This document shows positions 13,901 through 41,400 of a stretch of 64,000 nt of DNA, one piece after another (within the stretch, counting starts at the first letter, position 1; each line of letters opens with the position of its first letter). The stretch spans positions 1,302,001 to 1,366,000 of the forward strand of contig CAJFCJ010000010.1 in the NCBI GenBank assembly GCA_904063045.1. The letters are read 5' to 3'. The notes under the pieces were generated by a model. It was not told the origin of the DNA. It was given only the letters and a program-made list of their open reading frames with translations, and did no database searches. Made by a program: the position numbers and the translations under genes. This DNA comes from Dimorphilus gyrociliatus. Taxonomy: Eukaryota; Animalia; Annelida.

Positions 13901-14792
13901 TTTTTTGGACAAAATTAATTTCAATAATAAAACAGGGAATTCAACAAATCCATAGTCAAGGAAGTTCAGTAACCTAAGGGCTGAAGCCTTGATTAACAAG
14001 TGTGACTGATATGAAAATTTTCCTTTTCTTTGATCTGAAGAAAATTTTTCGTTTTCTCTTCCTTTATTTTTATAAAAAAAACCTAAACTAAGAAGTAATG
14101 CATGTATAAATGTAATTTACTCGTATTACAGGTATTAAAGTAGATCATGAGTAGTATTTAAAGAAAGAAAGAGAGAAAAAGGTTTACCTCTTTCTAAAAG
14201 GATTTATCAAGTTCTAACTTTATTACAAACTAAATTAGCTTTAAGCATGATCTAGTGCTAATTTATAATAATTCTAGTACACATAAAGAGAATATATGAT
14301 TGTATTTACCATATATCCTTTTATTGTCTTTATGTGTACATATTTATTATTAATTAGCTCAAATAGTACATCTCTCTTCGCTGTATTCTTGAGATGATTT
14401 TTCTTTTTTTTCACCTTTTAAAATAAAAAATTAAATAGGCTAAAATCTTTTTATAATCTACACCTTTAAATTGTTAAAAAGAATTATACTTAATATGGCT
14501 AGTAAAATTAACAAAAGACAGTTCCTTTTCCGATTATCTTCTAACCAGAACTTTCTGTTTATCGATATACCCTTTCTCTTTAAAACGACATCTATCGGCG
14601 GACGATTTTGAAGACTAATCGATATCTGACGGACTCCAATTTATTTATTCATTCTGCCGGCCGTAACGACTATTCTATTTATTCATGAGCGCTAAAAGGC
14701 TAAAAAATTTTACGCGTTACAGTCTCAGACAAACGAACCAGTTTGTTGTTGTTTATACAAGCAACAAGCTAGCTCTTTCCGCAGCTGGTCTA

Positions 14793-14806
14793 GTTACCAT
14801 AGTGAC
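14793..14806. promoter_or_regulatory. Candidate RFX X-box (GTTACC AT AGTGAC) next to a CAGCTG E-box
   Basis: Fits the degenerate X-box GYTRYY-N(1-3)-RRHRAC. CAGCTG is at 14782-14787. Both lie in a CpG-enriched island at about 14590-14900, about 2.1 kb past the stop codon of the pentameric channel gene. Confidence 0.35.
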
Positions 14807-15006
14807 AATTAGCCAGCGTAATAAAAACTCGGAAAAATGCACATCGAAAAGATCATCTGTCATAGCTCATCGCCTTGCCTCAATTTCCATTTGTTTCATC
14901 TGCTTAGTTTCTACTAGCAGTTCAATTCTAGATTTATTTATATATATCTATAGAAATATATATAAATATAGAAATATAGAAATATACTGTATATATATAT
15001 ATAAAA

Positions 15007-15070
15007 AGAGAGAGAGAGAGAGAGAGAGGAAAAGAGAGTGAGAGAGAAAGAAAGAGAAGAGGAGGAGAGA
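15007..15070. repeat. (GA)n microsatellite following a (TA)n tract
   Basis: agagagagag... directly visible. Confidence 0.9.
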
Positions 15071-16911
15071 TTTTACTTCAAATGACCCGCTTTCCATTTT
15101 AGTAAAATATAAGAATTTTCTATTAAAAATAGTTTTTACCTATATCATTTTAACATAACTACAAATCAAGTACATTTTTCTTGTCTGCGATTTATGCGCA
15201 ACACAAGTCGAGGCGCATAAATTTACATATATTAACCTTTCTCCCGATTATTGGTAAACTGTAGGAAAGAAACGAGCCTAAATATATATACTTTTTTTTA
15301 TTTAGCGCCTGCTTTGCTCTTTTTTTACGTAGCCTTCTAATAAAGGCTTTAGAAAAGGGGAATTGTTAGGAAAGGAGAGACCCTAATTTGTTTTGTTAAA
15401 CTTTTATTCTCCACTTGGAACCAATCGACCAGAGGAGTTTATTGCAAAGAGAAAAGGAAAAATATTCATCATTATCATTCACCCTTACATGTATATTTTA
15501 ATGGATCACAGCATTTTGTATTTCTAACTATCTGCAGGTTGACTAAAGGTCAATCTATCTTTCCTCCCCTCTAAGGAAAATAGTACGGTACCCTTACTGT
15601 GATATATAAGAAGACGATAGTTTGCAACGAGTTACAAATAGAAATCAAGCTAGGTCGTTAATGTCGCTAGTCCGATCGGCTACCGCTTTTACCGCTTAAT
15701 CTTGCATTTGGTTGATGAAAGACGTAGCTTTGACTAAAGAGATGAGGGAGGTGAAGATTTAGGGTTATAAGAAGGGGGAAATAGGCAGTTTGCTACAATT
15801 TATTCAGCTAAAGATCTTTGTTTTCTTTTTTGTATTTCCGATAAATATTTTTATACTAACGACTTTGTTAACCTGTAAACAAACGTTCTTTGTAAACTTT
15901 TATCTGAGAGCCCGTAAGTACCCTGCCGTCTATCCCTTTTCTATTTTGTATATATATATATATACATACAGGATAAACTCAAAAAATATGTATTATCAAT
16001 AATCATTTTTCATTTATATATTCTTTTATTTATTTCTTATAAGTTACGAAGGAGATTTTTACCGTCAATCTTTTGATCATGTTTTCTATCTTCTACTCTC
16101 TTTCTAATATTCCATCTTCTTTATTTTTTAATAAAAGAATTTCTATTTAACCCTTTTCTTTTTTTATAAAGTGAAAAGAAATAAGAAATGTTTACTAGGT
16201 ATAGATCTAAATATTTCTATTGGTTTCCGTTTCCAAATACACTTCTTCCTATCCTCTTTCTCACTCTCTTTTTAAAAAAAGGGAATGTTTGTTCGTTTTA
16301 GATAAATTCTTTTCTTTTACTTGAAATAATTTCTCTCTTTTTTTTATTCATGTCAATTAAAATCTTTCCTAAGAAATTTAATAGAAAATAAGATAGAAAG
16401 AAATAAGAATTTACGTTTTTAAACTGTTCGAAAAGAAATATAAATAAATAAATATATATATTAATATATATATATATATACCTTTATATATATACTGTAT
16501 ATATATATATAATAAAATATGAATAAATAAATTGTAATGCTTGCATAGAATTAGAGAAGTTTTTAAGAAAAAAAATAATAAAAGCAAAGGTTTTTTTGTT
16601 TCTTTTATAAATTGTGTTCTTAACTTGTTTTCATAATTGACAACAAACATTACTGAATGCTATATATGCCGTATGAACAATATATACAACTTTTTTTTCT
16701 GCAAGACAATATCGCGAATAGTATGCCAACTGATCTATGTATACTATTGTATACAATTTTCACTGGCATAAACAGTTAGCGGAGACAATACATTGAAACG
16801 TGTAAGGCATAACTCATCTGCATAAATTTGCATTGAAATTGAGCGAGGCTTAATCTTTTTTCCAGTTATTATTATTATTATAATAATAAATATTATTATT
16901 ATATCAATTTT

Positions 16912-19390
16912 TTAAATAGCATGAACTAACATCGTACTGTGTCGTCTGGATTGCGGATGAAGGTCTTTGATCTTCTCTTGCCAAGCTTTCTTTTTTGCCA
17001 GAAATTCCTGAAGCGAAAAAAATTCATTAGTAAGTCGCAATATTCGCATTAGTCACCTTGTAAAAAACCAAATAAAAGGCTTAGAATATAAGGGAAAATA
17101 TTATATAACCTTTATAACCCTCTTAAAGCACTTACTTACAAAAGTAGGCTTATAACAAGTTTTTTAATAGTTGCTAACAATTTTTAATGTTTGCCCATTG
17201 TCTATGCTCTTTAAACGATATGTATATAAATATATACAGTATATTATTTTAAAAATAAGAATCAACACGAATCTCGCTTTTATCTAATACATCTAAAACT
17301 CTAACTAAATATTATTATTAAAAGTTATTCACATCAACAGTCGGACTAGGAATTATTTAACCATAGTCCTTTTTAGTTTGTAGTTAATATATGGATATAC
17401 GAAAATTTCCTGTACCTTTTTAGACATAAATTAAGAGTGTTAAAATAAAAAGAAAGGTCGTGACATGTAAAGGAGAAGGAAATATCTCATTCCCAGAATT
17501 CTATGTACTATATTATTGTTATTAATAATTTGTAATGGAACTCTTATTTTACTCGATAACTTTTTAGTTATTTTAACATTTTTACTCTATTTTCTCCAAG
17601 TATTGCCACTAGAAAATTGCATAGAAGAGTGATCACATTTAATGAGTACATGAAGATCATTTTTAAAATTTAATCATAAACAAGGAATAGTAGTCTAATG
17701 AAAAATCGTGATCACAATTTAATCATGTCGATATACACTATAGTAAAAATAATAATAAAAGAAAAAACTGGAAAAAAAAACACTACCCCATAGCCAATAA
17801 AATAAATAGTTAAGTTTTAGAAGTAACAAGAGATATATAAATGAATATCATATATATTCAATTAAGTATAAAAGGAAAAATTATTCTGAAACTTCTTAAG
17901 GTAAGAAATATTTGTCCTAAAATGTGGATAAATCAAGATTTAGTGATTAACGATTTAGGGCATTTGGCGGTTTGATACCTTCCAAAAAAAACCAGCTGTT
18001 ACAGGTCTCTAGTTCTAACTCATATAAACTTCATCTTTTGGCTAAAATTAGCCTACGTTATTGAAGTGAGAGAGCGAGAGAGCGAGAGAGAGAGAGAGAG
18101 CGAAAGAAAGAAAAGAGATAGACTGAGGGATGGAGAGAAGAAAACTAAGGAAAAATCTCATCGCTAAATTTTAGGTTTTGTATAAATTATTTCTATAAAA
18201 ATATATTCTATATATGAAGGGGAAAATGCTAATTATTACTCCTAATATTTAACTACTTTTAAATCAATATAAAAATATTATATGCTAATTTTACAAATGA
18301 TTACTAAAAACGTGATGAAAATTTTACTTTTAAAAACGCGGAAATTAACTTGAAACTAACATGTAAAAAGCATAATGCTTAGTAAAGTATTTAAATTACT
18401 TGTTGAATTAAGCCTACACTAAAAACAATATACAAATATTAAGAACTCTTACAATATTAGTGAGAAATGTAATTGCCTTTTTTTTTAAAGAAAATCAAAT
18501 ATAAATAAACCTTTCTTTTTTTTTAACGAAAAAAAATTCTTTTTATCAAGTATTGCATAACGTACTGCAAACACTTAGGCCTATTTGCACAGGAGGAGAA
18601 ACATAACAAGTAGCTTCGTTAAAAGAATTTTGGTAATTGTATTTTTTATAGGAGTTATAAAGGTTAGATATTTCTCCTTTTCTTCTGTTGGAAACCTTTA
18701 GAAGAAGATTTATCAAATTCCACTTACTGATGTGTAATATGAACAATAGCAAGTGTAAAAAGAGTATACACGAGTTATACACATGTATATATAAATATAT
18801 ATATATATATATATACAGTATATATCTGTTACTATGAATACCCTTTTACAGATATGATAAAATATTTAGAAAGAAGCTATCACAATTTTGATGCTATTAG
18901 TGCTATACAACAGCAATAAATCATACTTTTTGCTAGGAGTACGTATATTTTACCTATTAATTTTTAATCAATAAAATATTCAATTATCAAAAGAAACCTA
19001 ATCGTTAATCATACATAAATACAAATCTAATAATTGCATTTGCATAAAAACGGTTAAATGCTTCTGATTACACTCTTTCAACTGACAGTTTCGTCTATTC
19101 AGCTATCGAAATAGCTAGATCTTTTCTCTTTTTCCTCACTATATGCTTATTTAATAATTATAAAAACATTAATTTATCATGAAAAGAAAACAAAATAAGA
19201 GAATAAAGTATAATTTGGAAGCAAATTATTTACTAAATTTCCTTATCATGTCAAAATTTTGACATTATCATGTCGCTTCATTTTGTAAATCACTTATTCA
19301 CTCAATCTCTTTTTATTTATTATTATTACATTTTTACTTTTTTCGACTCTCTTCCATTCTATTTTCAGTTTTTCCTTCCACTCTCTCCTA

Positions 19391-19430
<40 letters not shown>

Positions 19431-22400
19431 ACTCTCCCTCTCTCTGTCTGTCTTTGTTTATTCTTCATTTCATCATCTTATAAATAATGTTTTTTTTTTT
19501 AATTTTATCTTTTAATATTCGTCTTACTAAACAAGAGACAGGAGATGAAAAGAAAGCGGTTTAAGTAAAGACTACAAAGTGTAGCTAACCGAATTTACGG
19601 TTGCATAATAGTTCTATTTACCAGTTAAGCGTCTAATTTGGTCGTTTTGAGAATTCAAATATGCTTTACACTACTTTGAAGTTAACTTTTGGATTAGATT
19701 GAAAAAAAAAATGTCGCGCAATCTAATTAAACTTTTAATTTCATTAGTAATTTCCTGAAATTTTCAATTTAGAGAAACACGAAAGCAAAATAGAGATGGA
19801 GATAGATAGTTAGATAGATAGATAGAAAAAGAGACTAGGACTGATGTACAATTAGTTCAAATATATCCAGGCATGTAGAAAAAAAAACAATAATTAAAAT
19901 CTTATAAATGACTATTACAATCATTTGTAGCCCCAGTATATTTAATTAATACAATTTATAACTATTATAACAAATGAGATGCAATTATTCCGTTACATCT
20001 TTAAAAAATTGGCAATAAAAATATCGCAGAAAATATATAGAGAATTAATCATATTTGAAAGTCGATTTTAAATATCCTAATTATTTAGAGTTGCATGTTT
20101 CTAAACAACACTTGTGCATCATATTATCAATTTATGTGAACTAAGCACGTTGTGTCCTTTAACCGTGTGGCAGTGCTTCTCTTTTGTTTTTAAGAGATAA
20201 AATACTACGAAACTAAACTCACTAAACATTCCTAATTATTCAGGGAGAGATGAGTCAAGTGAACGGGAAAGTAAATAAGTTTTAGTAGGGAGCTTATTAA
20301 CATTTAAAAAAGGAAAAGGAAAGACGATAAGCCAATTAAAGGGAATAATACATGTGTTAATGTATGTACGAAAAAACTTACTAAATATTCCCTATCTTTT
20401 CTCTTCATTATCCTCCTTCTCTTACAAGCATCAAAATATAACCAGAATACAAAAACGACGTGACAGAGAATATAAATAACTGCAAACGCGAGGAAAACAT
20501 CCCTTTCCATTCTAGCTAGAAATTCAGAACCATGGTGGAAGAAGACAGTTATCAGGGCGTGCCATATGCAGACGACGCAAAGAATGACTAGAGACAAGAG
20601 CACGTACTTATCCATGTAAGTTAAATAAGAGATTTTCGGAAGACTCTGGTTGATGACAAACTTGAAGGCGACGGACGTGAGGAGAAGAGTAAAAGATAAT
20701 TGGAGACGGTTTTGCGGCAATTCCGGGCTGACAGCGAAAGTAGCGAAGGACAAGGCGCTAATAAAAAACATGACGAGGAAGACGTTCCAATAGAAATACC
20801 CAGGACGCCTAGCTGCTCTACATGTAACGCTTAGAGCAGGATGACATCGATTTGATGATGAATATTCTTGTGTCATTATTTTCTTAGCTACCTGAAAATA
20901 GGAGGAGATTTTAATGCACATCAATACAAATCTATCATCCATTTGTTTTCCCTATGCAAATGGTTTTATTTTTTAAACTTAATACATGGAAATTTTATGT
21001 CTAAATTGAGATAATATCGATTTAACCTTTCCTCATGGTTACTGGTTAATACATTGGCCAGATAAAACAACTATTTAGTTAAAGGGCTATGAAATAGAGA
21101 TTAAAATTAAGGTTATAAATATTTTTTTTTCGTGTATACTACTAATGTCATATTCTTAGATATTTAAAAGTTTGTCTTTCATCCTACTAATTATCATTCT
21201 TTTTTTACTATAAGTGTTGTGTCCTTAAGAAGATCTCGCTCTCTCTCTCTTTTAATAATTTACATCTTTCCTTAACTAAAAGTCATTACTTAGTTCAAGA
21301 TTTTAAAGTATGCAAAAAGTCTAAAAAAAAACCAAACTCAATTATTCCCTTTATCTTATAAGTATATTCTTTTTATGGTGGTTTGCACTTTTATCGTTTA
21401 AGAATTGTTTTGATTTTCCTTTTCAATAGATCTTTTTTTCGGGTGTCTAAATCTTTTCATGGCCAAAGCAAAGGTTCTTAGGAAAATCAATTGGAAATTG
21501 AAGAATATAAGTTCCTCTTTCCCTTTGAAAAACGTTACAATAGTGTGAGGAGCAAAAAAAATGGCGATCAACAGCATAGACAGTCTTAAGTGACGTCCAG
21601 TAACGCCTAACGATGCTATTAGATACTCAGTGACGCCTCTAAGCGCTGCTGTCGCCTAAGGAGACAGGGAGCCATTTTGTGTGACTGTAAGGAGCATCTG
21701 TAAAGAATTACTCTAATTTTGGAGCAAATTTAAAAAATGGACTTCTTATTGAGTGGTCAGAGGGAGTGAAAACTAGAGAGAAAACCTCTGAGATGATCAT
21801 AACGATTAGACTTTAAAGATTGTTATAGTATTTCAGTTAGACAAACATTTAGTGGATTTCGCAGGACTCTTAATGGTTCCCTTGCACGAAATTGTTTCTA
21901 TTGTATTCATTGTAGTGATTGCAAACTGGTTTTCTTTTTCTTCATAAAATATATTGTTGAATGTAGCATGGTCTACAAACAAAGATTTCCCTTTGAATAG
22001 CTCTATGAGACACTCCCTTACCGTTGACAAGAACGTCTATTGGCGGTTCTATTATTGTCTCATCTCTATTAATTCTATTTCAAGATCTGATCATCGTTAC
22101 CCGGGTAACAGAGCCCATTTACCTCAATATGTTCGTGCAGTCTCCATTCCTGCTGATCGACGAATGTCTGTACATTGATACCGCTCATCTCTAGCTCATC
22201 CGGTATAATATCGATTTCCGTATCCGGTCGTTCGCTCGTCATCGTGATAGTCAAGTCCTGCACATCTAGCGGGAAATCGTTCAACTCGAGATTTTCTAGA
22301 AACACGCCCCTAACTCGCCGCCTTTCCAATATAAAGGCTTCCCCCTTGCTATTTGTTGTCGCTGTTAACCATGTAGCCTCCTTTGTTTCACTAAGTACGT

Positions 22401-25400
22401 TATCGATGTATAGGAGGGGATTCCATAATTTATCTAATTCAATTCGCTTTAATTCATCAACAGATTTTCCATCCAAAGCCGGCTCTCTCCATCGAGCCTG
22501 GATGAAGGTATCGGCTGAATATTGTTCTTTTAAGGTATCGATTTCTCCAATCTTCAGGAAGACGACACGAAGTTCGACAAGAACCTGCATTTAGAAAATT
22601 TTTCAATAAATTATATCATACTGTTGTCCGCTGCTCGAGAGAAAAGTAACACTGATAAAACCAAAACATCCACACTATCACATAGCGATATATTTTTTCT
22701 CTAGAAAAGAAAATTCGGCTAACTTTAGTTAAATTACGTTTGCGCGCATGAAAGAAGATCGGCTTTCTAAGCGTGTAAATCGCGTTTCGTTCCGTTGTAG
22801 AACTCTATTAGGGTAGAAAATGAACGAAACATTCTTCAATAAGGAAGAAACCATTTTCTCCATATTTTTTTATTTTACCGTTTTGTTAAAAAGTGTTAAC
22901 AGCTGAAAAAACGAATAAAAAGAGATGGAACTAATAAATTGTATGAATTTTTATCACTATTACGAATGTATAAAGATCGGACTATTAGAAGTCAGAGCTG
23001 GAGGATAGGTGCCTTATATCCTCCATAAAGACCTTAAAATTGGACAAAAATTCTATACGTTTAAATGACATATATAAATATATACGTTACTATTTGTTAG
23101 TACTACTCATAGGAAAATGATTATAGATATCTTAAATAAGAATTATTTGAGGGCTTCCCACTCGAAAGAATAACATAGTTAAGAGGGTAACAGGTAGCTT
23201 TATTTTAATTATTACTCAACCAAATATACACAGCACGGTACCAACGGTAAATTGTGTATAAATACAAACGCGTTAGAAGCGGATGGGTTTGACCTATTGT
23301 CCTATTTCAACAAGAACAGCTCAAGTTGTACTATAATTTAAAAAGGAGAAGTCCATAGGAGAGAAGGAAGAAAGAAATAGATTAATATCTTATGAAAAAA
23401 TGCCGAAAGATGTTATTTTGACTCTTCAAACTTTTCTTCTCTTCTTTTCATGCTTTCCTATTTATTTAATAAAAGGAGAAAGAGAGTAAAGAGGAGAGAG
23501 ACCGTAGATTATTTAACTTCCTTAGCGCCTCTTATTGAGCAGATCAATTGTAAACACCATGGACTTGATTATATAGACGTAAAGTTAATTCCTACTACTT
23601 ACTTATATCGCGTGACTTGCTCATGAGCCAGAAAATAGGCTAAGTGACTGCCGAAGGGAGCGGCCAAAAAAATTTGAATGTCTGGAAATTGGTTATTTTA
23701 CCAGCGATAAGCCAGGGTTAAAATATCGGCTTTTGTTTGTTTAGAATACTTGACGACTAGGTCGGACATAAATAAACAAATATGTAAGGCTGAGGTGAAA
23801 GTAAACTAACTTTTTCCTTTCGGATTCTTAGTCGTTCATCCCTGAGTACATCGGCTCTTGTCTGGCGTCTTCTCGTCCTATGAGCAGCGGCTGCATTTTC
23901 TACAAGAGTCTCTCGAAGTAGTTCAATCGCTTCCGTCAAACGGTCCGCCGGATCTAAATCGATTCTTACTTCCGGCACAAGACTATTTCTACTCGAAACT
24001 CCTCCTCCGGAACTCTCTTCTTCCCCTGAGGAATATTATTAGGCGTATAATTTTACAAACACATGAAATATTCACTTAACTACACAATAGGAAACTATAC
24101 ATCACACTTTGTAAAGTTTCTCTTTTAATTATAGATATAATTCGCTTAGCTAGGGGTTAGGTGGGCTGTAAATTTGCACACGGCAGAGCAGTCGCTTAAT
24201 TTACTTCTTTTCATCTATCGTACTTATTATCAACTTTCTATTTCTATTAAAATTTTCTTCACTGCCAACCTTTACAGCCTTTCATCTTTTCTTCTCTTTC
24301 TAAGTTACTCTTTCTCTTGTAATTCAAATCTAGTAATGTCACAGTGAATTAAGAAGGAATGTTCTATGAGAATGTCAAAATTTAACTAATACCAATATCC
24401 TTCAAACTCTAAATTCAATTATGACTTATAATTGAACTTTTGCAACAATAATTTTATTTAGTTCGACAAACTTTAGACGTTTTGAAAAGATTCTCTAAAA
24501 AAGATTTTTTCTGTCTCAAATGAAAATCGTAAAAGTCTACATTATCTGAAATATATCCTATACTTTTCAAGTATTTACCTAAAAGCAGGTATATTGTTAA
24601 ACACATAGCTAGCTCAAAGAGTGCACATTAATATGTGATTAATGAATACATTTTTAATGTAATAGTCTTCTTCTTTCATCCTATAAAGATTTGTGCCATT
24701 TTGATTTTCTATAAACTTTCTCTAATTTATATTAATTATTACGGAAATGGCTTTTGCTCTTAATTATAATTATTACTTCGTAATATTTTCCAAGTGTTTC
24801 AAACAAATAAGCTTCTTTTTTTTCTGTTTTCTTTTTCTTAGGCCTATATACGAAAAATTCCCTCTCTTTGTGTCTTTCTTTCTCTCCGTCCCTGACTATC
24901 TGTCTGTCTGTCTGTCTGTTTCTCTCTCCCTCTCTTTCTATCTCCCCTACTCTCCATTTTCTTTACAAATATATAGAAAGCAGCTTGAAAATAAAAAGAA
25001 TTTTTATGACATGTAAACAGTGCGTCACCTTTAAGTCTACGTATAAAAGTAAATAATGTAGAATTTAATTTAGCACCTAAAATATCGACAACAAAACAAA
25101 GAGAGATTTACCGAAAGTTGATATTCGTTAAATGTAATTAAGAGATATATTGAAGAGTATGAATTAATAGATAATTGTAATCCATACTATACTAATCGCT
25201 ATATATATAATATATATAATATATATTCCCTATAACTATTCGGACATTCTACTTCGAAACTGTAACATAGATGTAATAATATCTTTCCTTTATTGTATCT
25301 TTATTTGATTGTTATTCGTTTAGAATATAGAATAAAGTTTAACACTGATATTTTCATGTATGCATCGTAATTAACTTATATATTAACCTTTTATCCAACA

Positions 25401-28296
25401 TTCTATTCCATCTCTCTTTGTTTTATAGTCTAGTTATATTTTTCTAAATACAGAACTCATCATTTCAGTTTCTTTTTTCGATTTTAGATTGGAAAGGAAA
25501 GAAATACTTATGATTTTATCTTAGGAGAATTACATGTACAATACATTAACTATACAAATTAAATGCACAAATTCTATTCTATTAAGGTAAAAGAACTGCA
25601 AAAAGAGAAAGAAGAGAGAGCGAGAGAAGATTTATTTTTCTAGATGCTGCTAAGTAACTTTATATTAAATTTATTGTGTAATTATATATATATATATATA
25701 TATATATACAGTATATACATAAATAAGTTTATCCTTATATATGTTTTATAATTAAAAGAATAATTATCTAAAGATACAGTCTATATATCTATATATCTAT
25801 TCATTTACAGAAAAATAATTCATCTTAGCAAAAGGGAATAAATACCACGCCAGATTTCTTTTAATAATTTATAAAGATGTTTAAAAGGAATGACTTTCTC
25901 TATTATTATTACCAAATCATCCATTCAATTAACAAGAAGAAATGATTAAAAGAAAAGGAATGAATATAATTTAATACTTAATATCTAATTTAAAAAGAAA
26001 AAAATAAGCTAATAATCTTTTAGCTAGTTGAATATTATCTTTTTTTTTCTGTCGTTCATTTTACTCAATCTAGAAACTGTCTACATTTATAAAGCTATAG
26101 AACATCAATCATTAGACATTAAATTGCTTTTATTTATCCTATGTAATTACATTTTTTTTAAGTAAAACAGAAAAAACTTCCAAGATATTTCTTCGTTATT
26201 ATTGTTTTTGTGTTTATCCGTATTTTGTTTTATAATATTTATAATATTCTATAGCTAAAAGCTTTTCTTTGAATACTTTAAACCTTAGCATTCAAACAAA
26301 TATATTACACTGAATGATAATGTCTCTCATTTAAACATTTATAAAAGCATTCTTTCACATAATAATTTCTTTATTAACGAATAAAAGTTGTGTTTTTTTT
26401 CTCACCAATTTCATTCTAATCTCTTGTAATTCTCTTTTTTTATATATATAATACCTTATTATATATGCATGCATAGATATTAAACATTTTTTTGTTATAG
26501 ATAAATTAATATAAAGTACTATTTTATTAAATTTGCAAATGGGAATGGATATGCTTTGGAACTCTATTAAAATAGTTAATTATTTACTTATAAAAAAAAA
26601 TGTTAATTTATCATTTTAACTTGATAACTTCACTCTCATCAGACCGTAAATGCTCTAAATTTTTTTTCTTCCATTCATTTTCATTTCTTACTTTCTAATA
26701 GTTTCTATACAGATCTGTTTTTTTTGTCTTAGTTTCCTATCGAATGACAGTGGAGAAGAAGAAAATATTTAAATATACTTTCTCAACACCAACTTTTCAT
26801 GCAATTATATGTATTAGCTTTGTCATTACTAATCTTTTACTAAGGACATGAGTGAAATTCTGTACTTAATAATTTCATAAATTTCCTCCATAGGCCTACA
26901 AATATAATCACTTGGTAAATCGTTTTGCAGGATAACACTATAGGCCTGAAAAACAGTTCTATAAATAAAACTTTGGCTGACAGGTTTCAGCTCTTTAACG
27001 AACATAATCACGTTGACAGCCTGCCTAACCCCGGGGAGCTTCAAGACTTTTACCTCTTTCCAACCGCAACAAGGCGTCCTCGTCTTCTTCCCTGCAGTCC
27101 GTTCCATATTCCTATAAAATAAAAGGGTAAATTTAAAGAGTAAGTAAACTACTTAGCAATGTAAAGGTCAATAAATTAATTTTTCAAAAAAAATTATTTC
27201 TATTTAATGTGAACTTCTTAAAACAAATTGGAAAGAAATTTATATTTTTATTAAAGTCGTCAACTCTCTATTCTCCCGGAGACAAAACTAGGCCATGACT
27301 AACCCAGTCATTATTCGGTAAAAGAGAAAATGCATTAGAACTTATAAGAATTTTAGTAAACAAGATCTTTGCAAACTCTGTCAATTATTTATAATTTTTT
27401 ATACTGTTCCTCTAAAATTTTCATTATCCTTGAATACTAATCTACATTATTTTCGTATTAATTGTAATAATAAAATTAAGATTAAAGTAGAGAGGAGAAA
27501 AAATAGGCTAAATTTTATTTCTCCTCCTTGTTTGCTATTTGTTTTTAATTTTTCTTTGTAAAGCAGAAATTTTTAATTTACATTTTCCCTAAACTTAAAG
27601 AGTTTTCTCTCGGTTCTTTTAACCTAATAACCGGGCCGCTCTCGACCCTTCAATTAACTACTTCTCTTCAATTTACTTAGGCTTAGGAAAGTCATTATAA
27701 AAGTATCAAATAAGAATTTTAGATACTCATTCTTTCTCCTCAAATTTTTGCCCTAATAATCAGACTGTGCTCAAAGAATCTACTAGAAAATTCCTTCATA
27801 TTAGTCTATTTAAAAAAAGGAATTACATTCTTTCAAACATAGGCCTGACAAACTATATCAATTGGAATTCTTTATTTTGTATCACTTCATCACTTTTCTT
27901 TTATTTTCCCCTTTTCATTGTCAACTCTATTTTTTGAATGAAAACAATTAGGAAAAACTTTAGGTAAAAGAAATAGAGACCTTGATATGAAAGAACGAAA
28001 AAAATTGTTCTAAAAATCCTTGCGCTAGTTTCTTTATATAAATCTAGTACCAAAATAGAATAGGTAGAAAGAAGAAAATCTACCGTCAAATTGGAGATAC
28101 AACAGTCGTTCTTCGAGCCTGAACTCACCGAATCTAATGATCTTGCTCGCCTCGTTGATGACGATCTCATCCTGTGGCCGTATTGGCCTCCCATAGGCGT
28201 TGAATATTTATCCAATCGCACTTTTCCAGCAGACGCTGTAGCCGTCGTATTTTCAGTTGCGCCGAATAGCGCCGTTGTACGTCCGCTCACATTCAT
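16912..28296 (-). CDS. Cys-less (Pro-loop) pentameric ligand-gated ion channel subunit, about 502 aa (517 aa with the alternative donor)
   Basis: Exons (minus): 28296-28129 (alternative donor 28084), 27111-27054, 24025-23811, 22584-22123, 20891-20382, 17007-16912. All introns are GT-AG with matching phases (0,1,0,0,0), total 1509 nt. Motifs: beta1-2 VELRVVFLKIGEIDTLKEQYSADTFIQARW; loop A LWNPLLYIDN; Pro-loop LELNDFPLDVQDL without flanking Cys; pre-M1 RRPGYFYWN; M2 NRLQLSFTLLLTSVAF; M2-M3 LPKISYLTYMD; short M3-M4 loop; tail DACKRRRIMKRKDREYLEFLAKKKAWQEKIKDLHPQSRRHSTMLVHAI*. The three core exons are very secure. The N-terminal and last exons rest on phase and composition. Confidence 0.88.
19392..19446. 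repeat. (CA)n followed by (CT)n microsatellite in channel intron 5
   Basis: About 20 CA units followed by CT units, directly visible. Confidence 0.92.
21558..21678. promoter_or_regulatory. Candidate intronic cis-regulatory island
   Basis: GC/CpG-elevated patch in AT-rich intron 4, bracketed by inverted YY1-like motifs AAAATGGCG (21558-21566) and GCCATTTT (21671-21678), with TGACGT/TGACGC half-CRE sites inside. Confidence 0.3.
22096..22109. promoter_or_regulatory. Perfect palindromic RFX X-box-like site GTTACCCGGGTAAC
   Basis: Exact 14-bp palindrome that fits the RFX consensus GTNRCC-N(0-3)-RGYAAC. It lies 13 nt inside intron 4 of the pentameric channel gene. Confidence 0.5.
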
Positions 28297-28323
28297 AATC
28301 CTAGATGTGTGTAATTTTTCTTC

Positions 28324-28500
28324 CTTTTATAGGGAAGCTTCTTTAAAAGCGTCGCTGGACGTCTCCGGCGAAACGACGCCCGACGTTCGTCGTCGACCGC
28401 ACGCTGAGCGAAAGACCGGCAATATACAGATAGGAGACGGTTAGAGTGATGTCAGCGACACCTACATCCTATAGAGGGCGCTATACAGTGGGACATTCGT
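28324..28500 (-). promoter_or_regulatory. CpG-rich 5' leader / proximal promoter of the pentameric channel
   Basis: The densest CpG patch I noticed in the window, directly upstream of ATG 28296. TATAAAAG lies on the minus strand at 28331->28324, and TCACGTGA at 28615-28622 further upstream. Confidence 0.4.
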
Positions 28501-29877
28501 GATTATTTTGTCCGATATGATCCCATTTGTCATCAATCATTTGTCTTCGAACGACCATATCGTAATGACTGTTGTGCTAAGCCCGTATATAGAAATCATT
28601 ACTAGTGCGTTAAATCACGTGACGCAAGATATATGCATTTCGGTTAATTAAATGCCATCAAAGGAACATTATCCTTCACCATCTCATCATGTGACTAAAT
28701 GATAATTAGAGATATTTAGTGGTACATAGACCATTCGTGCAGTTAACAGTCGTCAAAAGATTATCGTGTCACGAAATTATTATAAAAATCCATCTATACT
28801 ATTTATCATTGATCGCTTTCTTCCTTCATTTAAGAGATAACAAAAACAAACGGTTTCATTTCAATCTTTAAGCGAACGTCTGATGATACAGCAAAAAAAA
28901 AAAAAGAAATAAACAACTATATTAGCAACGTTATTTATTCATTCAATAGCTAATATATAAATTTCAGAATAGGAAAACCTCCTATATTTACCACTTTTCC
29001 CTGCCGTTCCTTTCATAAAGCTGTAACTACAAAAGGTTTCTTAACTTCCCCTGATATTGAGAGGCATCTTGTGGACACTTTTTCTGTTGTATATAAAGAA
29101 GTCTAGTGATAGAATCCTAGGAAGGTTTAGGCATATTAAGAGGTATACTAGCAGCCTAAGTCTTAACTAGAGAACGACGCGCCGGAGGCAACACGTCGGG
29201 TGAACCTGGATAAATAAGGCCTAGATGCTGATTTCTTTTAACACGTGTTTAGACTCTAATCAACTTAAATATTACTTTTATTTTTTCTTTATTTTAGTGC
29301 ATTGTTATAAATTTTCTTAATCAGATATTCTATCACTATCTTTAAAAAAAGCTTTGTAAATATATTTCATCATACAAAATTTGTTTCCACTCCGTTTACT
29401 TAATCAATTAGTGTGTTTCTTAATATAGGCCTTGAGAATATAAGTAAAGAGTGCAAAAATTGCGTAAAAAATACTAATTAGCCAAAAATCACGGAAGATG
29501 AAAAAAAAAGGTAAATAAGATTTGGGAAAATGAGGTATTTTCTTCTGATTGTATGCAAAAAGAGAGACTGGGCCGAGGGGAGAGTAAGGGAGAAGAAAAT
29601 ATGCAATAATTTATCAATAAAAGAAGTTTAGAGGCAAAAATATCGGTCTTTTACAGTCTGATATGCACTTCTTCGGGTGTTAAGTCCTCAAAATATACTA
29701 AATTTTATCATTTAATCGATTAGTTACAAGAGATTAATAGTTTCCTTGGTTATAAGCACAAAGTCCAACAGATAGAGATAATATGTCGTGTCGTAAAAGA
29801 ATACCATAGACAGTTTGAAGGCTGCTCTCTTATTGTTAAGTTGGCGACCAGAGACAGTTTGATAAATAGAGAACAAT

Positions 29878-32648
29878 ATGGAGAATAATCCACAGAATAT
29901 TACAACTGTAAAAGTCTCTTCAGCGAATTCTCAAGATAATCTTACAGTTGACGGAAAGGTTAATGAAACAAAATTTGGTATTGAAAATCCAGCCTTTAAT
30001 GATAGATTGGACCATCAAAATGATGTTAAAGAAGAAACAGTCATTGGTTTCAATGAGCCAAAGTCTATGGAGAGACTTGCTCCAGAAAAACCATACGCTG
30101 GAATGAATAAAGAAGATTTACTATACTTTTCACAAACGAACTTTTGGATTCGATTAAGATATGTTGTTCTCGCCATAATGGGGTATATTTTTTATGTTTC
30201 CTTTAAAAATTATTACCTGTTTATGACCCTCTTTCATCGTTCGTCAAATTTTATTATTACTCATATACTTGCATCTTGCACTCCTCTATCAATCTTACTA
30301 AGTTAGTGTAATCGACCCTTTCATATTTGTTTATTAAGGGTTACAAAGGAAAACAATTTGTAAACTCTCACCTTTATTTATACAAGAGGGGATCCATTTA
30401 TTAAATAGCTTCGTTTATTTTTTCATAGAGTTGATTTTACAACTGTAATGTATAACATTGAACAGGCTCGCTTGGCTCGGACTACTAGCGGCTATTATAG
30501 CTTTAACCATTGTTTGGCCTAGATGTAAGGTAAATCAAGCATTTTTCTATGAGAATTAATTATATATTGGCCCAATTTATAATTTGAATCAAAGTCAAGA
30601 AGTTGGTTAACAATATTTTTATCTTTGCAGAAAGAACCCACAACAGAATGGTGGCAAAGTTCAAGAATTTACAGTATCTATGTACCGACCTTTTACGATT
30701 CTGATAATGATGGAATTGGAGATTTGAAAGGAATTGAAAACAAATTAGATTACATTAAGGATTTACACGTATCTGCCATACACTTATCTGCCCTTTATGA
30801 GAGTGGAGTAGGCAATGTCGATCAAGGGTACGAAATTGTTGATCATAAAGCTATTTGGAATAATCTTGGAACATTGAGCGATTTCGATAGTTTAGTTAAC
30901 GCTTCCCATGCAAACGGTAAAAATTAAAATTTTTAAATTTTACCAACTGTATCATCCGATAACTTTTTCCCAGGTTTGAAGGTTATTGTCGATCTAGTGC
31001 CAGGTCATACAAGTACAAGTCACAATTGGTTTGTGCAAAGTAGCAATGCCGTTCCTGAATATGAAAACTATTATATATGGCGTGACTGTGCTCCTCCAAA
31101 TCTTCCAAATAATTGGGTATAAAGGAAATTTAATGCAATTACAATGATAAATTAATATTTCCATCAATATCATAACAGAAAAGCGTATATGGTGGTCCTG
31201 CGTGGACTCAAGCTGGTACTAGAAATCAATGCTATCTTCATCAACTATCAAACTCTCAAGCTCAATTAAATTTGAGAATAAAGAAAGTTCGAGACAGTAT
31301 TGAAGATATTATGGATTTTTGGTTAAACAGGGGTGTCGATGGCTTTAAAGTCATTCATTCAACTTTCTTATACGTTGACAATGAGTACAGAGATGAACCA
31401 AATGCTAATAACGGTCTAAAGTACGATAGTTTGAATCATATATATACTAGAGCTCAGCCAGAAGTATATAATTTAATTAGCGAATGGAGATATAAATTAG
31501 ATGAAAGATATGGCCAAAATTCAAGAAAGTGAGACAATTTGCATTATTATTCTATAATAAGCTTATTAAGTTTTGTCTAAAAAATTCTTAGGATCCTTAT
31601 GACTGACGCGGATGAAAACGTAGCAAAACTTAAAGAGTATTATAATTATTTGGGAAGAAATGGATCTCAAGTTCCCATGAATTTTCCATTTACTAAACTT
31701 GCCGACAGTTGCGATGGTCTCTGCGTTACAACTAATGTCCGTTTATGGACTCAAAATACCCCCACTGATTGTTTCCCCAATTGGCTGGTAAAAAGAGATT
31801 GATTAAATTATTCATAATTTGCTTATAACAAATGGTATTATTTTAAAAAATAACAGACCGGAACTCAAGATATAAGCAGACTGAAATCTAGATCTCCAGC
31901 TAATAGTAAAGCTTACAATATACTTAAAATGACCTTACCAGGAATTTCAATAAATTATTACGGGGAAGAAATTGGAATGGTTGATGGAACTAACTCAAAC
32001 GTAGATCCAACAGTAAGCTCTCAATAAGTTTTTTATTATCTCATTCATTCTTTAACGATTGCTGTTTTTTGTAACGTTTAGCCATTGCGAAGAGATAAAT
32101 TTAGAACGCCTATGCAATGGGATTCCAGGGTACTAAATAATGGTTTCTCAAATGCATCAAATCTCTACATTCCAGCATTATCGACCAATATAAGTGTCGC
32201 TACTTCACGTAGTGACTTGAACGCTTTCAAATCTGTCACGAAATTAAAGATGGATGCGTTCAGTTTGCAATTTGGAACTTTTGAAATTCTGCCGAATTTA
32301 CAACAAAATCTATTCGGTTTTCTAAGAAGATTTAATGGAAAAGACAGGTTAGCAGATAAAGATTCCGTATTCTTATCTTATCTTTATTGAATAGTTGTAT
32401 TTTTTCCCTGTATTAGTTTCTTAGTAGTTGCAAATTTCGGAAGAACACAAACCACCGAAAACCTGTCCAACAAGCACGAAAGAATACCCTCCGAGGCTAA
32501 TGTTGTGGCCAACATTGGGCAGGAATCTAGTTATCCTATCGATGACGATAAGGATATCAAATTAAAATCTGTCAGTATAAAACCTGGCGAGGCCATCGTA
32601 TTTAAATGGGACTACGAAAGGAGTATGAAAGATAAAAAAGATAAATAA
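29878..32648 (+). CDS. SLC3A1-like: SLC3 family amino-acid transporter heavy chain (rBAT/SLC3A1-like; GH13 fold, probably non-catalytic), 665 aa
   Basis: Exons 29878-30182, 30466-30529, 30631-30916, 30974-31116, 31179-31528, 31592-31787, 31857-32012, 32082-32347, 32417-32648. All GT-AG, total 1998 nt. SLC3 N-domain YAGMNKEDLLYFSQTNFWIRLRY; single TM ending in PRCK (the light-chain disulfide Cys); GH13 motifs WWQ...FYDSDNDGIGDLKGI, DLVPGHTS, GVDGF, TLPG..YYGEEIGM, RTPMQW. Confidence 0.92.
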
Positions 32649-38478: not shown

Positions 38479-41400
38479 TCACAATTTCGAATTGAGTCTA
38501 GACAAGTAGGATTCGTGTAAATTCGCTTCGTTTTGTCGAACTTCTCTGTAGGATGTAGATGAAAAAAAGTGGAGCAAGTCGAATAGAAGTTCGAATACTT
38601 CCGCTAATGTGATTATGGAAATTCCTACCCATAACCCTAATTGTCCTCCTATATCTGACACCAACTGATTTCTGCTATAATCCTCACTTTCTTCTGTCTT
38701 TACCACATTACTGTCTGCTATGTAAACGTTTAATCTTGCAAAATCTTTCATCGCTTCTTCCCTTCGTGTGACATTAAAATGGCTCTTGAGAGACGTGTAT
38801 TTGCCCTGTAAAAATAGATTTACCCGTTTTCGACATATCTCAAAAGAATAGTTGTACCTAAAGAAATAAATATTAGTCTAGAAATATAACTACACTTAGG
38901 ATACGAATTCTGGTATAACTTTAAATCAAATGATACAAATGGGCAATTAATTAATATAGCCATGTTCTTTATGCATATCAATTGTCCTTGAAAACGGATA
39001 AATACTATAGTAGTAGTTCGATTAAATCTCTCAACAAACTTTCCTATACCGAAAACATCCCAGTAGGTGGCATCACCTTCATAACCAGCAGCTGGCCATT
39101 TGGATAGGGAATAAGAAACATCGTAAGTCACTTCATCGCATGCAGGAAAACACATGCACGATTCAAGAGCAGTAGAGTTTCTTGACAATCTAATTAACGT
39201 TTAAAGTGAAAGGAAATACCCTTGAAAGAACATACCCATTTATATAAGACATAATCGTAGTTAAATACTATATAAATTTGTCATGGAAATATATAAGAAA
39301 ATTGAAAAGTAGCCTTTCTAATAGTATGATACTCAAAAATAAGATTTCCATAGAACAACAAACAAACCTAGAATATACTCAACTCTACTGGAAAATATCC
39401 AAAGAGATTGTTATTTATAATTGTCGTACAAGACTACTAATAGATATGATTATAAAGATTACTCTCTATTAGGCTGGTTCAATGCAATTAATGCATCTAG
39501 AAATCTTTCTACGCTTTTAGTAATATGATAAATAACTTTTAAATTTATTTACAGTAAATAGGTACGCTATAATATAATAATAATAATAATAACATATATC
39601 TATATATTTATATACAGTATATGCTGCTTATGTAGATATTTCATATTATATTAATAACCTATATCAATTTTAATATATACTACCCTATCATCTTTAGATG
39701 AAATACATAGATTTAGGTTGAAACCTTCGTGCAAATTACTCAAGGAAATATTTTAAAGAACTTTTTCCTCTCTCTTTTTTCGGAATAAAACTGCTTCTCA
39801 TATAAAGTAAATTGCATATGTTTGATTTGAAGATACATTTTTAGTTATACTAATATAAATATAATTAAAAATTGGGTTATAAAACTATTATCTTTTCTTT
39901 ATATGATATAGAAATCATTGTAGATAAATTTCTTATCATAAATGTTTCCTATCTCTTACTTTAAGATGCAAAAACATACTGTAAGTGATTATCTATGGAA
40001 ATACAATTTAAAATAATGTCGGAATCTTTCGCCGTTATAGAGAACTTGATTGGATAGTCTCATGATGATACTATGTTGGCAGACCACTTCCAATCTCATT
40101 CCGTATTATTTAGTATGCACAGAATGTTGCCAAATTGTGTTTCGTACTAAAAATATACCAGTTTTTAAGAAAAAATTTTCCCCTCTTTCAGCTTTTATAA
40201 GACCTTGTAAGCCTTTCTGCCCTCCCTCAAGATTTGGAGATAGGGGTTGATCACTTTAAACGTCAATACCTGCCCTTCATTTTTCTAGCACATTCGATCT
40301 TACTGTGTAGATCTAATAATGCCTGCAAGCATTCTTCACTTGGTTCTGAAATACACTTCTTGGGGAATAAATCATCATTTCTACACAGAGGCTTATCTGA
40401 GTTATGTCTGAGAGGCAATGCATTATCCGAACAGTTGCATTCTTCTTCAACAAATTTTTGAATGCACATCTTCTGACACGACATTAATCTATATTCTCCG
40501 TGTTCGCCAAACGGATTAACTTTCGAACAATTTCCATGAGGAGGACCAATTCGAATATTTCGTCTTGGTTGTACTCCAAAAGATGCACTAAAACCAGTTG
40601 GAACATCATATCCTTCAGTGAACGGATATGCTCTCGTTCCAGGCCTGTGAATAACAACTCTAACACCTTCTGAAGCTGACATGGGACTACGAGATTCGTG
40701 CAATCCAGGGAGCATCCGAATTTCATCGTTCTTATCTAGCATACCTTTTAGAAATTTTTTGAATAATTAATGTAATTTATATAGATATAATATGCAAATG
40801 TCTATATGTTATGAATATGGTATATGTCAATGGCAGCTATGCAAGAGATTCAAATATTTATTATAAATTTCTTTGTAGCATATATGACATTTCGGAGACT
40901 TCTTTCATTATAATGATAAAATGTGTGCCTATAAAAAAGAAAGGCGAATGACATTATCCTATAATGTTTACCTTTTGTTCTATTTAATCGAATTCTATAT
41001 ATCCTATAAAAGGAACAACTAATAAAGAATACGAACTAAGAATCGTTAAAACGAGCTATTCTGGTTTCACTCACATTGCAGAAATATTATCAATAATTGC
41101 CAGTTACATAAAACAAACGGAAGGAAACTTACCAGAGCCTGATAAAAGTATGGAGGACCATCCATTTTCAATTCCTTCAGACAGTTCTCTTTCATTAACG
41201 GCAGGCTCATAGGTGAAACAATTAAAATAATATGAATCGAAGAAGCGTTTGAATCTATCCGTAATATTACACGATCTCCCTGCGTATTGACAGCTAACTA
41301 TAAAACCCTCTAATTGAACAGCGGCTTCTTCAATAACAGACTCCTCTATGTTAGCAGACATAGTAGTTCTTGAAAATATATCTTGAAATACTTCAGGAAA

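What the first reader, a model, noticed from the sequence alone, without database searches (positions are those of the whole stretch)
16912..28296. Cys-less pentameric channel with hallmarks of inverted topology (ligand-binding domain in the cytosol)
Seen: (1) the reconstructed N-terminus (MNVSGRTTALFGATENTT...RMRSSSTRRARSLDS...EEDEDALLRLERGEEESSGGG...) is about 147 polar residues with no hydrophobic signal peptide; (2) the Cys-loop is LELNDFPLDVQDL, with no disulfide; (3) the beta-sandwich has no N-x-S/T sequon; (4) the M3-M4 loop is only about 14 residues and not basic; (5) the post-M4 tail is long and strongly basic (KRRRIMKRKDREYLEFLAKKKAWQEKIK) and has a PKA site RRHS, and the N-extension has an Akt-type RMRSSS. 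Established: canonical pLGICs have a cleaved signal peptide, a glycosylated extracellular domain, a short extracellular C-terminus and regulatory sites in the M3-M4 loop. The positive-inside rule places basic clusters in the cytosol. Cys-less Pro-loop receptors are known in invertebrates but are largely uncharacterised. Inference: with four TMs the N-domain and C-tail are on the same side, and every cue points to the cytosol. This would make it an intracellular-ligand-gated pentamer in the plasma membrane or an organelle. I cannot check whether this has been reported for the family.
Basis: partly seen in the sequence, partly recalled or inferred. Interest (0 to 1): 0.85.

Follow-up and report, generated by a model that had tools for sequence, protein, structure and literature searches.

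The report
Cys-less pentameric channel, probably inverted
This worm gene encodes a relative of the neurotransmitter-receptor channels that has no export signal and carries its positive charges on the "wrong" side, as do about 200 of its relatives, so its sensor domain probably faces the cell interior, which has not been reported for this channel family.

Summary
A six-exon, all GT-AG, minus-strand gene (28296 to 16912) encodes a 502-aa pentameric ligand-gated channel subunit. It has a Pro-loop without cysteines, a 147-aa polar N-extension, no sequon in the beta-sandwich, a 14-aa M3-M4 hairpin and a 48-aa tail with 15 K/R.

It is not an orphan oddity. It belongs to the known "Cys-less Pro-loop receptor" clade (Jaiteh 2016; Johnson 2023), in a 100/100-supported annelid, nemertean and flatworm orthogroup. 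It is 86% identical to a Capitella protein.

The topology cues hold across the family. Only 3 of 200 eukaryotic members have a hydrophobic N-terminus, against 18 of 23 bacterial relatives scored the same way. In 152 of 160 members, K+R is higher on the ligand-binding-domain side (mean 12.3 against 3.4). The post-M4 basic motif and an RRxS/T site are conserved. Transcript contigs of relatives show in-frame stops upstream of their start codons.

I judge an inward-facing (cytosolic) ligand-binding domain the best reading, at about 0.6. It is unproven. I found no paper proposing this topology. First readers of this scan noted the same idea for two paralogues elsewhere in this genome.

The parts
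28129..28296 (-). Exon 1: start codon at 28296, 56 aa of polar N-extension (includes RMRSSS at 28156-28173)
   Evidence: The ATG is the first start codon after an in-frame stop. GTGAGT donor. The N-terminus resembles that of the Owenia orthologue.
27054..27111 (-). Exon 2: 58 nt, acidic stretch of the N-extension
   Evidence: AG acceptor and GTAAAA donor. It is needed to link phase 0 to phase 1. It aligns with the acidic tract of orthologues.
23811..24025 (-). Exon 3: end of the N-extension and the conserved N-terminal helix (aa 98-124 at 23880-23960), followed by a basic linker ending in RIRKEK
   Evidence: The helix motif is conserved in annelid, nemertean and flatworm orthologues. The equivalent helix has pLDDT about 90 in the model of the Owenia orthologue.
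22123..22584 (-). Exon 4: beta-sandwich ligand-binding domain, beta-1 to beta-9, including the cysteine-free Pro-loop (22252-22290)
   Evidence: Pfam PF02931, 9.5e-10. 83% identity to P0002 and 1342 relatives.
20382..20891 (-). Exon 5: short loop C, beta-10 and pre-M1 RAARRPG (20799-20891); M1 (20730-20798); M2 with 9' Leu (20652-20708); M3 (20541-20627); 14-aa M3-M4 hairpin (20499-20540); M4 (20433-20498); start of the basic tail (DACKRRRIMKRKDREYL)
   Evidence: Pfam PF02932; hydropathy segments; coordinates.
16912..17007 (-). Exon 6: remainder of the basic C-tail with RRHS (16936-16947) and the TAA stop
   Evidence: AG acceptor. The tail aligns residue for residue with the Capitella, Owenia and Lineus tails, including SRR-x-ST.
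28297..29877 (.). 1.6-kb intergenic region between the channel gene's start codon and the first exon of a divergent SLC3A2-like gene (29878-30306, + strand). It limits the room for a hidden upstream exon.
   Evidence: Pfam SLC3A2_N, 1.2e-6, on the ATG-started ORF at 29878. No read evidence was available.

Best explanation
[quoted passage not shown] It sits in an annelid, nemertean and flatworm orthogroup that automatic annotation calls 'GABA receptor gamma-3-like'.

Shown here: it has the full channel fold. This comprises an N-terminal helix, a ten-strand beta-sandwich with the FPxD Pro-loop, the pre-M1 arginine, four membrane helices and a 9' leucine in M2.

Inferred: because no hydrophobic segment precedes M1, the ~330 N-terminal residues are made and folded in the cytosol. 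M1 then inserts with its N-side in, as a type II signal anchor. This leaves the ligand-binding domain, the M2-M3 loop, the disordered N-extension and the long basic helix that continues M4 all in the cytosol. Only the 7-aa M1-M2 turn and the 14-aa M3-M4 turn would be exposed outside the cell or in an organelle lumen.

On this reading the pentamer is gated or regulated from inside the cell, by a cytosolic small molecule or partner. A conserved basophilic-kinase site (RRHS) and a juxtamembrane Cys-KRRR could also contribute. The ligand, ion selectivity and host membrane (plasma membrane or organelle) are unknown.
For: Identity and fold:
- Pfam LBD and TMD domains are both found.
- The family profile matches ELIC at 1e-29 and GABA-A and glycine receptors at about 1e-25.
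- The AlphaFold2 model of the Owenia orthologue has mean pLDDT 80.8, above 90 in the LBD and TMD.
- Foldseek matches GABA-A, GlyR and GLIC-chimera chains at E about 1e-20, target TM-score 0.66-0.82.
- The tree places the window protein in a 100/100-supported 13-row orthogroup and, within it, in a six-row annelid set (99/95).

No signal peptide, family-wide:
- Maximum KD(10) in the first 40 aa has median 0.91 in 200 eukaryotic members. Only 3 reach 2.4; two of these are the beta-1 strand of short models.
- Among 23 bacterial or archaeal relatives scored identically, the median is 2.72 and 18 reach 2.4.
- N-extensions contain no membrane-length hydrophobic stretch.
- Spliced transcript contigs of four relatives have in-frame stops 3-27 codons upstream of the start codon.

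Charge bias:
- K+R on the LBD side (15 aa before M1, the M2-M3 loop, first 25 aa of tail) averages 12.3, against 3.4 on the other side. The LBD side is higher in 152 of 160 members. In the window protein it is about 19 against 3.
- The pre-M1 flank is net +3.5 on average. By the charge-difference rule (my knowledge: Hartmann 1989), that disfavours moving the N-side across the membrane.

Tail and loops:
- The tail motif [KR][KR]RR-x-M-xx-KD-x-E-[YH] is conserved from molluscs to flatworms. SRR-x-ST is conserved in annelids and nemerteans.
- M4 continues as one 65-residue helix.
- The M3-M4 loop has a median length of 7 aa, so the usual cytosolic domain is missing from its usual place.
- Bacterial relatives in which M4 was detected have tails of 0-5 aa.

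Cysteines:
- The LBD has no conserved disulfide. There is one conserved unpaired Cys, in 146 of 212 sequences.
- Flatworm long M3-M4 loops carry even numbers of Cys and up to 5 sequons.

Motif in orthologues: an acidic tract followed by [FY][FY]DA, resembling the cytosolic FFAT motif, occurs in their N-extensions.
Against:
- Every pentameric channel characterised so far has its ligand-binding domain outside the cell or in the periplasm.
- The basic tail (+9) could simply pack against the acidic LBD (net -10), whichever side it is on.
- Schistosome paralogues have 100-aa, net-positive M3-M4 loops.
- Sequon depletion in the LBD is mild (0.43 observed against 0.83 expected), and the sequences are related, so counts are not independent.
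- Rare proteins move long N-terminal domains across the membrane without a signal peptide (my recollection: neuregulin-1).
- The FFAT-like motif is absent from the window protein.
- My signal-peptide test is a hydropathy heuristic, not SignalP or DeepTMHMM.
- Planarian relatives act in mechanosensory neurons (cited in PMC9874803), which is equally compatible with an ordinary receptor.
Confidence: 0.6

Rival explanations
1. Same gene and family, but ordinary orientation. The ligand-binding domain reaches the outside or lumen by an unconventional route, with M1 acting as a reverse signal anchor, possibly helped by an insertase or chaperone. The basic post-M4 helix lies on the outer face, where it packs against the acidic ligand-binding domain or binds lipid head groups. 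The channel is then an orphan receptor for an extracellular transmitter.
For: - All characterised family members have this orientation, and the fold is otherwise standard.
- The LBD is net -10 and the tail +9, which suits intramolecular pairing.
- Pre-M1 basic residues are also found in canonical receptors (my knowledge), so they do not discriminate.
- Schistosome M3-M4 loops are long and net basic, like canonical intracellular domains.
- Planarian relatives are needed for sensory-neuron function (PMC9874803).
Against: - It would require moving 200 to more than 1000 residues, including a folded beta-sandwich, across the membrane after synthesis. N-extensions reach 911 aa in the family.
- N-terminal domains that fold block such transfer (my knowledge: Denzer 1995).
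- Only 3 of 200 members have a hydrophobic N-terminus, against 18 of 23 bacterial relatives.
- K+R bias is 12.3 against 3.4.
- There is no conserved disulfide or sequon in the LBD.
- An RRxS/T site is conserved in the tail.
Confidence: 0.3
2. Annotation artefact. The true transcript starts with an undetected exon that encodes a signal peptide, either upstream of 28296 or in an intron. The polar N-terminus would then be a reconstruction error.
For: - There are no reads or same-species transcripts to fix the 5' end.
- Minus-strand ORFs with hydrophobic starts exist near 29478-29617.
- One relative's contig (L002) has a hydrophobic ORF extension upstream of the conserved Met.
Against: - The start of exon 1 resembles the Owenia N-terminus.
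- The ATG is preceded by an in-frame stop.
- Only 1.6 kb separates it from a divergent neighbouring gene.
- Four spliced transcript contigs of relatives have upstream in-frame stops, and three of them have no signal peptide.
- RefSeq and transcriptome models from more than six phyla agree.
- Hydrophobic ORFs are expected by chance in DNA of 28% G+C.
Confidence: 0.07
3. A decaying or non-channel relic: a pseudogene, or a subunit that no longer forms a pore.
For: No expression data for this species. The ligand and function are unknown for the whole clade.
Against: - The reading frame is intact across six exons with canonical splice sites.
- Identity to Capitella is 86% and branches in the orthogroup are short.
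- All superfamily-invariant residues are kept (Pro-loop FPxD, pre-M1 Arg, 9' Leu).
- RNA runs hold parts of the exons.
Confidence: 0.03

Closest known systems
Eukaryotic 'Cys-less Pro-loop receptors' of Spiralia (Jaiteh, Taly & Henin 2016, PMC4795631; schistosome 'Cys-less LGICs', Johnson et al. 2023, PMC9874803)
   Same: This is the family the gene belongs to. Shared features are the absence of Cys-loop cysteines, a conserved FPxD, four TM helices and no second Cys-loop. Best hits are annelid, nemertean, flatworm, mollusc, rotifer and brachiopod proteins.
   Different: Nothing differs at the gene level. What is new is the reading. Both papers describe the beta-sandwich as extracellular. Neither comments on the missing signal peptide, the charge bias or the basic post-M4 helix.
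Prokaryotic pentameric channels ELIC and GLIC
   Same: ELIC is the closest solved structure by sequence (1e-29). These channels also lack the Cys-loop disulfide and have a very short M3-M4 hairpin.
   Different: Bacterial relatives have N-terminal signal peptides (18 of 23) and C-tails of 0-5 aa where M4 was detected. The window protein has no signal peptide, a 147-aa N-extension and a 48-aa basic tail.
Canonical animal Cys-loop receptors (GABA-A, glycine, nicotinic, 5-HT3)
   Same: Same fold (Foldseek E about 1e-20, target TM-score about 0.7). They share the Pro-loop FPxD, the pre-M1 Arg and the 9' Leu.
   Different: The window protein has no Cys-loop disulfide, no signal peptide, no conserved glycosylation site and no long M3-M4 intracellular domain. 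Its long basic amphipathic helix follows M4. In canonical receptors the MA helix precedes M4 (the MA comparison is from my own knowledge).
Channels gated from the cytosol (cyclic-nucleotide-gated channels, IP3 and ryanodine receptors): functional analogy only
   Same: If the inferred topology is right, the ligand-binding domain and regulatory tails are cytosolic and the pore is opened from inside.
   Different: These are unrelated folds with no homology. No ligand is known here.

Membership tests
Pentameric ligand-gated ion channel (Pro-loop receptor) superfamily | N-terminal beta-sandwich ligand-binding domain (Pfam PF02931) | tested here: met
   PF02931 at 9.5e-10 on exon 4. The AF2 model of the orthologue has 10 strands at pLDDT above 90.
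Pentameric ligand-gated ion channel (Pro-loop receptor) superfamily | Pro-loop with F/Y-P-x-D, the only motif with an absolutely conserved proline (PMC4795631) | tested here: met
   DFPLDVQ at aa 250-256. F, P, D and Q are invariant in the 80-sequence alignment.
Pentameric ligand-gated ion channel (Pro-loop receptor) superfamily | Four transmembrane helices after the beta-sandwich, with pre-M1 Arg and M2 9' Leu | tested here: met
   Hydropathy segments at aa 332-459. PF02932 at 3e-5, below its gathering score. Helices M1-M4 appear in the model. The pre-M1 Arg is invariant.
Pentameric ligand-gated ion channel (Pro-loop receptor) superfamily | Assembly into pentamers that form an ion pore | not testable with these tools
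Cys-loop receptors in the strict sense (animal neurotransmitter receptors) | Two cysteines 13 residues apart closing the beta6-beta7 loop | tested here: not met
   Leu and Leu stand at the flanking positions (LELNDFPLDVQDL). There is no conserved Cys pair anywhere in the LBD.
Cys-loop receptors in the strict sense (animal neurotransmitter receptors) | Cleavable N-terminal signal peptide that places the ligand-binding domain outside | tested here: not met
   Maximum KD(10) is 0.51 in the first 40 aa and 0.97 in the first 147 aa. The family median is 0.91, against 2.72 in bacterial relatives. This is a heuristic test only.
Cys-loop receptors in the strict sense (animal neurotransmitter receptors) | Long cytosolic M3-M4 domain and short C-terminus | tested here: not met
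   M3-M4 is 14 aa and the C-tail 48 aa.
Eukaryotic Cys-less clade (Jaiteh 2016) | Groups with spiralian and protist Cys-less sequences rather than with Cys-loop receptors | tested here: met
   All 120 best hits are spiralian Cys-less proteins. The tree gives a 100/100 orthogroup with annelid, nemertean and flatworm members. No Cys-loop outgroup was included in the tree.
Inverted-topology pentameric channel (proposed here, not an established family) | Ligand-binding domain and both termini on the cytosolic side | not testable with these tools
   Only indirect cues are available: no signal peptide, K+R bias of 12.3 against 3.4, and a conserved RRxS/T and Cys-KRRR in the tail.

The most novel reading that the evidence does not exclude
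The whole animal Cys-less branch of the pentameric channels (hundreds of genes in annelids, molluscs, flatworms, nemerteans, rotifers, brachiopods and acoels) is inserted upside-down relative to every characterised member. On this reading these are channels gated from the cytosol. The basic helix that continues M4 takes the place of the canonical MA helix. In some orthologues an FFAT-like motif in the N-extension would tether the channel at ER contact sites. If so, applying ligands from outside the cell could not be expected to activate them.
Probability: 0.5. Interest if true: 0.9.

Novelty: new variant of a known kind. Interest (0 to 1): 0.78.

Why it matters
Pentameric ligand-gated channels are textbook extracellular-ligand receptors and major drug and anthelmintic targets. 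A conserved animal branch with its ligand-binding domain in the cytosol would have three consequences.

- It would add a new signalling mode to the superfamily: second-messenger or metabolite gating through a Cys-loop-type fold.
- It would change how these orphans should be tested. Inside-out patches and cytosolic ligands would replace bath application.
- It would matter for the schistosome and tapeworm members that have been proposed as drug targets (PMC9874803), because a drug would have to enter the cell to reach the orthosteric site.

The prediction is cheap to test with tags and glycosylation reporters.

Tried and rejected
- **Read evidence.** No splice or 5'-end evidence from reads was possible. 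The Rfam search stopped at 25190. One local script masked the places. Another read them but printed only true or false.
- **Same-species transcripts.** None turned up in the protein collections. The best hits to exon 4 were 73% identical or less among short proteins.
- **Cytosolic domains fused to long extensions.** Pfam on ten members with long N- or C-extensions found nothing informative. The only hit was a DUF4706 in a probable leech gene fusion.
- **FFAT-like motif in the window gene.** None in any minus-strand frame of 22585-30500. The motif therefore supports the orthologues, not this protein.
- **Apparent exceptions with hydrophobic N-termini.** These proved to be two-unit gene models in oysters (P0153, P0154), a Capitella model lacking the conserved helix (P0157), the beta-1 strand itself in short models, or an AT-rich 5' ORF extension (P0155 on L002). 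Only P0117, a long-branch member with an acidic tail, has a convincing N-terminal membrane segment.
- **Rfam.** No RNA family in 14000-25190.
- **Literature.** Six full-text searches found no paper proposing an inverted or cytosolic ligand-binding domain for any pentameric channel.
- **Window protein in the structure and large search tools.** Exons and orthologues were used instead.

Full report
**What is there.**
The window is AT-rich animal DNA (25-37% G+C). On the minus strand between 28296 and 16912 lie six exons with canonical GT-AG introns: 28296-28129, 27111-27054, 24025-23811, 22584-22123, 20891-20382 and 17007-16912. Exon 2 (58 nt) is needed to carry phase 0 into the phase-1 start of exon 3.

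The product is 502 aa. Exon 4 matches Pfam Neur_chan_LBD (9.5e-10). Exon 5 matches Neur_chan_memb (3e-5, below that model's gathering score).
- 147 polar residues come before beta-1, and no window of 10 residues exceeds 0.97 hydropathy.
- The Pro-loop reads LELNDFPLDVQDL.
- There is no sequon in the 185-aa beta-sandwich.
- The M3-M4 turn is 14 aa, with 2 K/R and 3 D/E.
- The tail is 48 aa, with 15 K/R and 6 D/E, and contains RRHS.

**What it belongs to.**
An exhaustive HMMER search with exon 4 found 1342 relatives, 70 of them below 1e-30. Named hits are annelid, nemertean, flatworm, mollusc, rotifer, brachiopod and acoel proteins. [quoted passage not shown]

The window protein is 86% identical to Capitella CAPTEDRAFT_228357 from beta-1 to the last residue. 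That confirms exons 4-6 and the stop codon. It is 66% identical to an Owenia protein from aa 50 onward.

A maximum-likelihood tree puts it in a 100/100-supported orthogroup of annelid, nemertean and flatworm sequences, inside an annelid subclade (99/95). The organism is therefore most likely an annelid.

This is the 'Cys-less Pro-loop receptor' clade described by Jaiteh et al. 2016 (PMC4795631) and, for schistosomes, by Johnson et al. 2023 (PMC9874803). The latter also reports that planarian relatives act in mechanosensory neurons.

The closest solved structure by sequence is ELIC (1e-29). An AlphaFold2 model of the Owenia orthologue is confident (pLDDT above 90 in both domains). It matches GABA-A, glycine-receptor and GLIC-chimera chains (E about 1e-20, target TM-score 0.66-0.82).

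**Is the missing signal peptide real?**
I could not get reads. No same-species transcript-derived protein was in the collections. The case therefore rests on comparison.

I scored the maximum Kyte-Doolittle hydropathy over 10 residues within the first 40 aa:
- **200 Met-started eukaryotic family members:** median 0.91; three reach 2.4. Two of those three are the beta-1 strand of short models.
- **23 bacterial or archaeal relatives** fetched with the family profile: median 2.72; 18 reach 2.4.

So the test does detect signal peptides where they exist.

N-extensions range from 0 to 911 aa and contain no membrane-length hydrophobic stretch. The apparent exceptions are two-unit gene models or mispredicted first exons.

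Spliced transcript contigs of four relatives carry in-frame stops 3-27 codons upstream of the start codon. In three of them the N-terminus is polar. In the fourth, a hydrophobic AT-rich ORF extension precedes the Met that aligns with other species.

In the window itself:
- The ATG at 28296 follows an in-frame stop.
- Its N-terminus resembles Owenia's.
- A divergent SLC3A2-like gene starts only 1.6 kb away.

**Other topology cues, across the family.**
In 160 sequences with all landmarks:
- K+R on the LBD side (15 residues before M1, the M2-M3 loop, the first 25 tail residues) averages 12.3, against 3.4 on the other side. The LBD side is higher in 152 of 160.
- The M3-M4 loop has a median of 7 residues and is slightly acidic.
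- The tail has a median of 48 residues, with 8 K/R in its first 25.

The tail begins with a motif conserved from molluscs to flatworms: often a Cys, then KRRR/KKRR, then x-M-xx-KD-x-E-Y/H. Annelid and nemertean tails share SRR-x-ST.

In the model, M4 runs on as a single 65-residue helix, so about 37 basic residues project on the LBD side. Bacterial relatives in which M4 was detected end 0-5 residues after it.

The LBD has one conserved, unpaired cysteine (146 of 212 sequences) and no conserved pair. Sequons in the LBD are somewhat fewer than chance (0.43 against 0.83). They are not conserved as they are in canonical receptors.

Flatworm members with long M3-M4 loops show 2 or 4 cysteines, and up to 5 sequons, in those loops.

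Orthologues carry an acidic tract followed by [FY][FY]DA in the N-extension. From memory this fits the cytosolic VAP-binding FFAT motif. The window protein lacks it.

**Interpretation.**
With four membrane helices, the N-domain and the tail are on the same side. A 330-residue N-terminal region that includes a folded beta-sandwich has no preceding signal. Its flank next to M1 is net +3 to +4. By established rules it should stay in the cytosol: the positive-inside rule, the charge-difference rule, and the block that folded N-domains impose on translocation. I cite these rules from my own knowledge.

The simplest reading is that the ligand-binding domain, both extensions and the M2-M3 coupling loop are cytosolic. 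Only the two short turns would face out. I put this at about 0.6.

The main rival, at about 0.3, is ordinary orientation reached by an unconventional route. There the basic tail would pair with the acidic LBD (net -10 against +9). Schistosome paralogues, with long net-basic M3-M4 loops, fit that rival better.

A hidden signal-peptide exon (about 0.07) and a relic gene (about 0.03) are unlikely.

**Novelty.**
The gene family is known. The topology reading is not in any paper I could search: six full-text searches, plus a reading of the two key papers, both of which call the domain extracellular. Subscription journals are largely missing from that library.

Within this scan, first readers raised the same idea for two paralogues on other pieces of this genome. 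Those notes are unchecked and are not independent evidence.

**Limits.**
- No experimental or read-level evidence.
- Hydropathy heuristics stood in for dedicated predictors.
- The family sequences are related, so counts overstate independence.
- The structure model is of an orthologue and of a monomer.

Noticed in passing
Orthologues P0158 (aa ~75-90), P0160, P0155, P0002, P0159, P0004; absent from the window at 22585-30500: An acidic tract followed by [FY][FY]DA (for example ENFYDASAED, ENFYDAPQEN, ADYFDAPTEA) is conserved in the otherwise variable N-extension of annelid, nemertean and Macrostomum orthologues. It looks like an FFAT motif, which binds VAP in the cytosol. The consensus is recalled from memory and was not scored with a published matrix. 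The window protein lacks it.
   Followed up: partly
window 29878-30306 (+): An ATG-started ORF matching Pfam SLC3A2_N (1.2e-6), probably the first exon of a 4F2hc-like heavy-chain gene. It is transcribed divergently, 1.6 kb from the channel gene's start codon.
   Followed up: partly
window 38820-41925 (-): Three ORFs match successive parts of the amiloride-sensitive sodium channel (ASC/DEG-ENaC) Pfam model. This is another ion-channel gene in the window.
   Followed up: no
That cost the session's only read-laying run. Nothing is claimed about this sequence.
   Followed up: no
P0117 (ENA contig, 454 aa): A long-branch family member with a convincing N-terminal membrane segment (aa ~22-42) directly before beta-1, and an acidic rather than basic C-tail. 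It may be a member with ordinary orientation and would make a useful natural contrast.
   Followed up: partly
P0153, P0154 (Crassostrea virginica, Ostrea edulis, ~677 aa): These gene models contain two complete channel units in tandem. They are either fused neighbouring paralogues or genuine two-unit proteins. Each unit lacks a signal peptide.
   Followed up: no
Model m7c3b7afb7959 (Owenia orthologue), residues 431-495: M4 and the post-M4 tail are predicted as one continuous 65-residue helix at pLDDT above 90. It mirrors the MA-M4 helix of canonical receptors, but extends from the other end of M4.
   Followed up: partly
window 28325-28335 (-), about 35 nt upstream of the ATG: A TATAAAAG sequence sits just upstream of the start codon, after a G+C-rich stretch. 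It could be a TATA box, or simply part of the 5' UTR.
   Followed up: no
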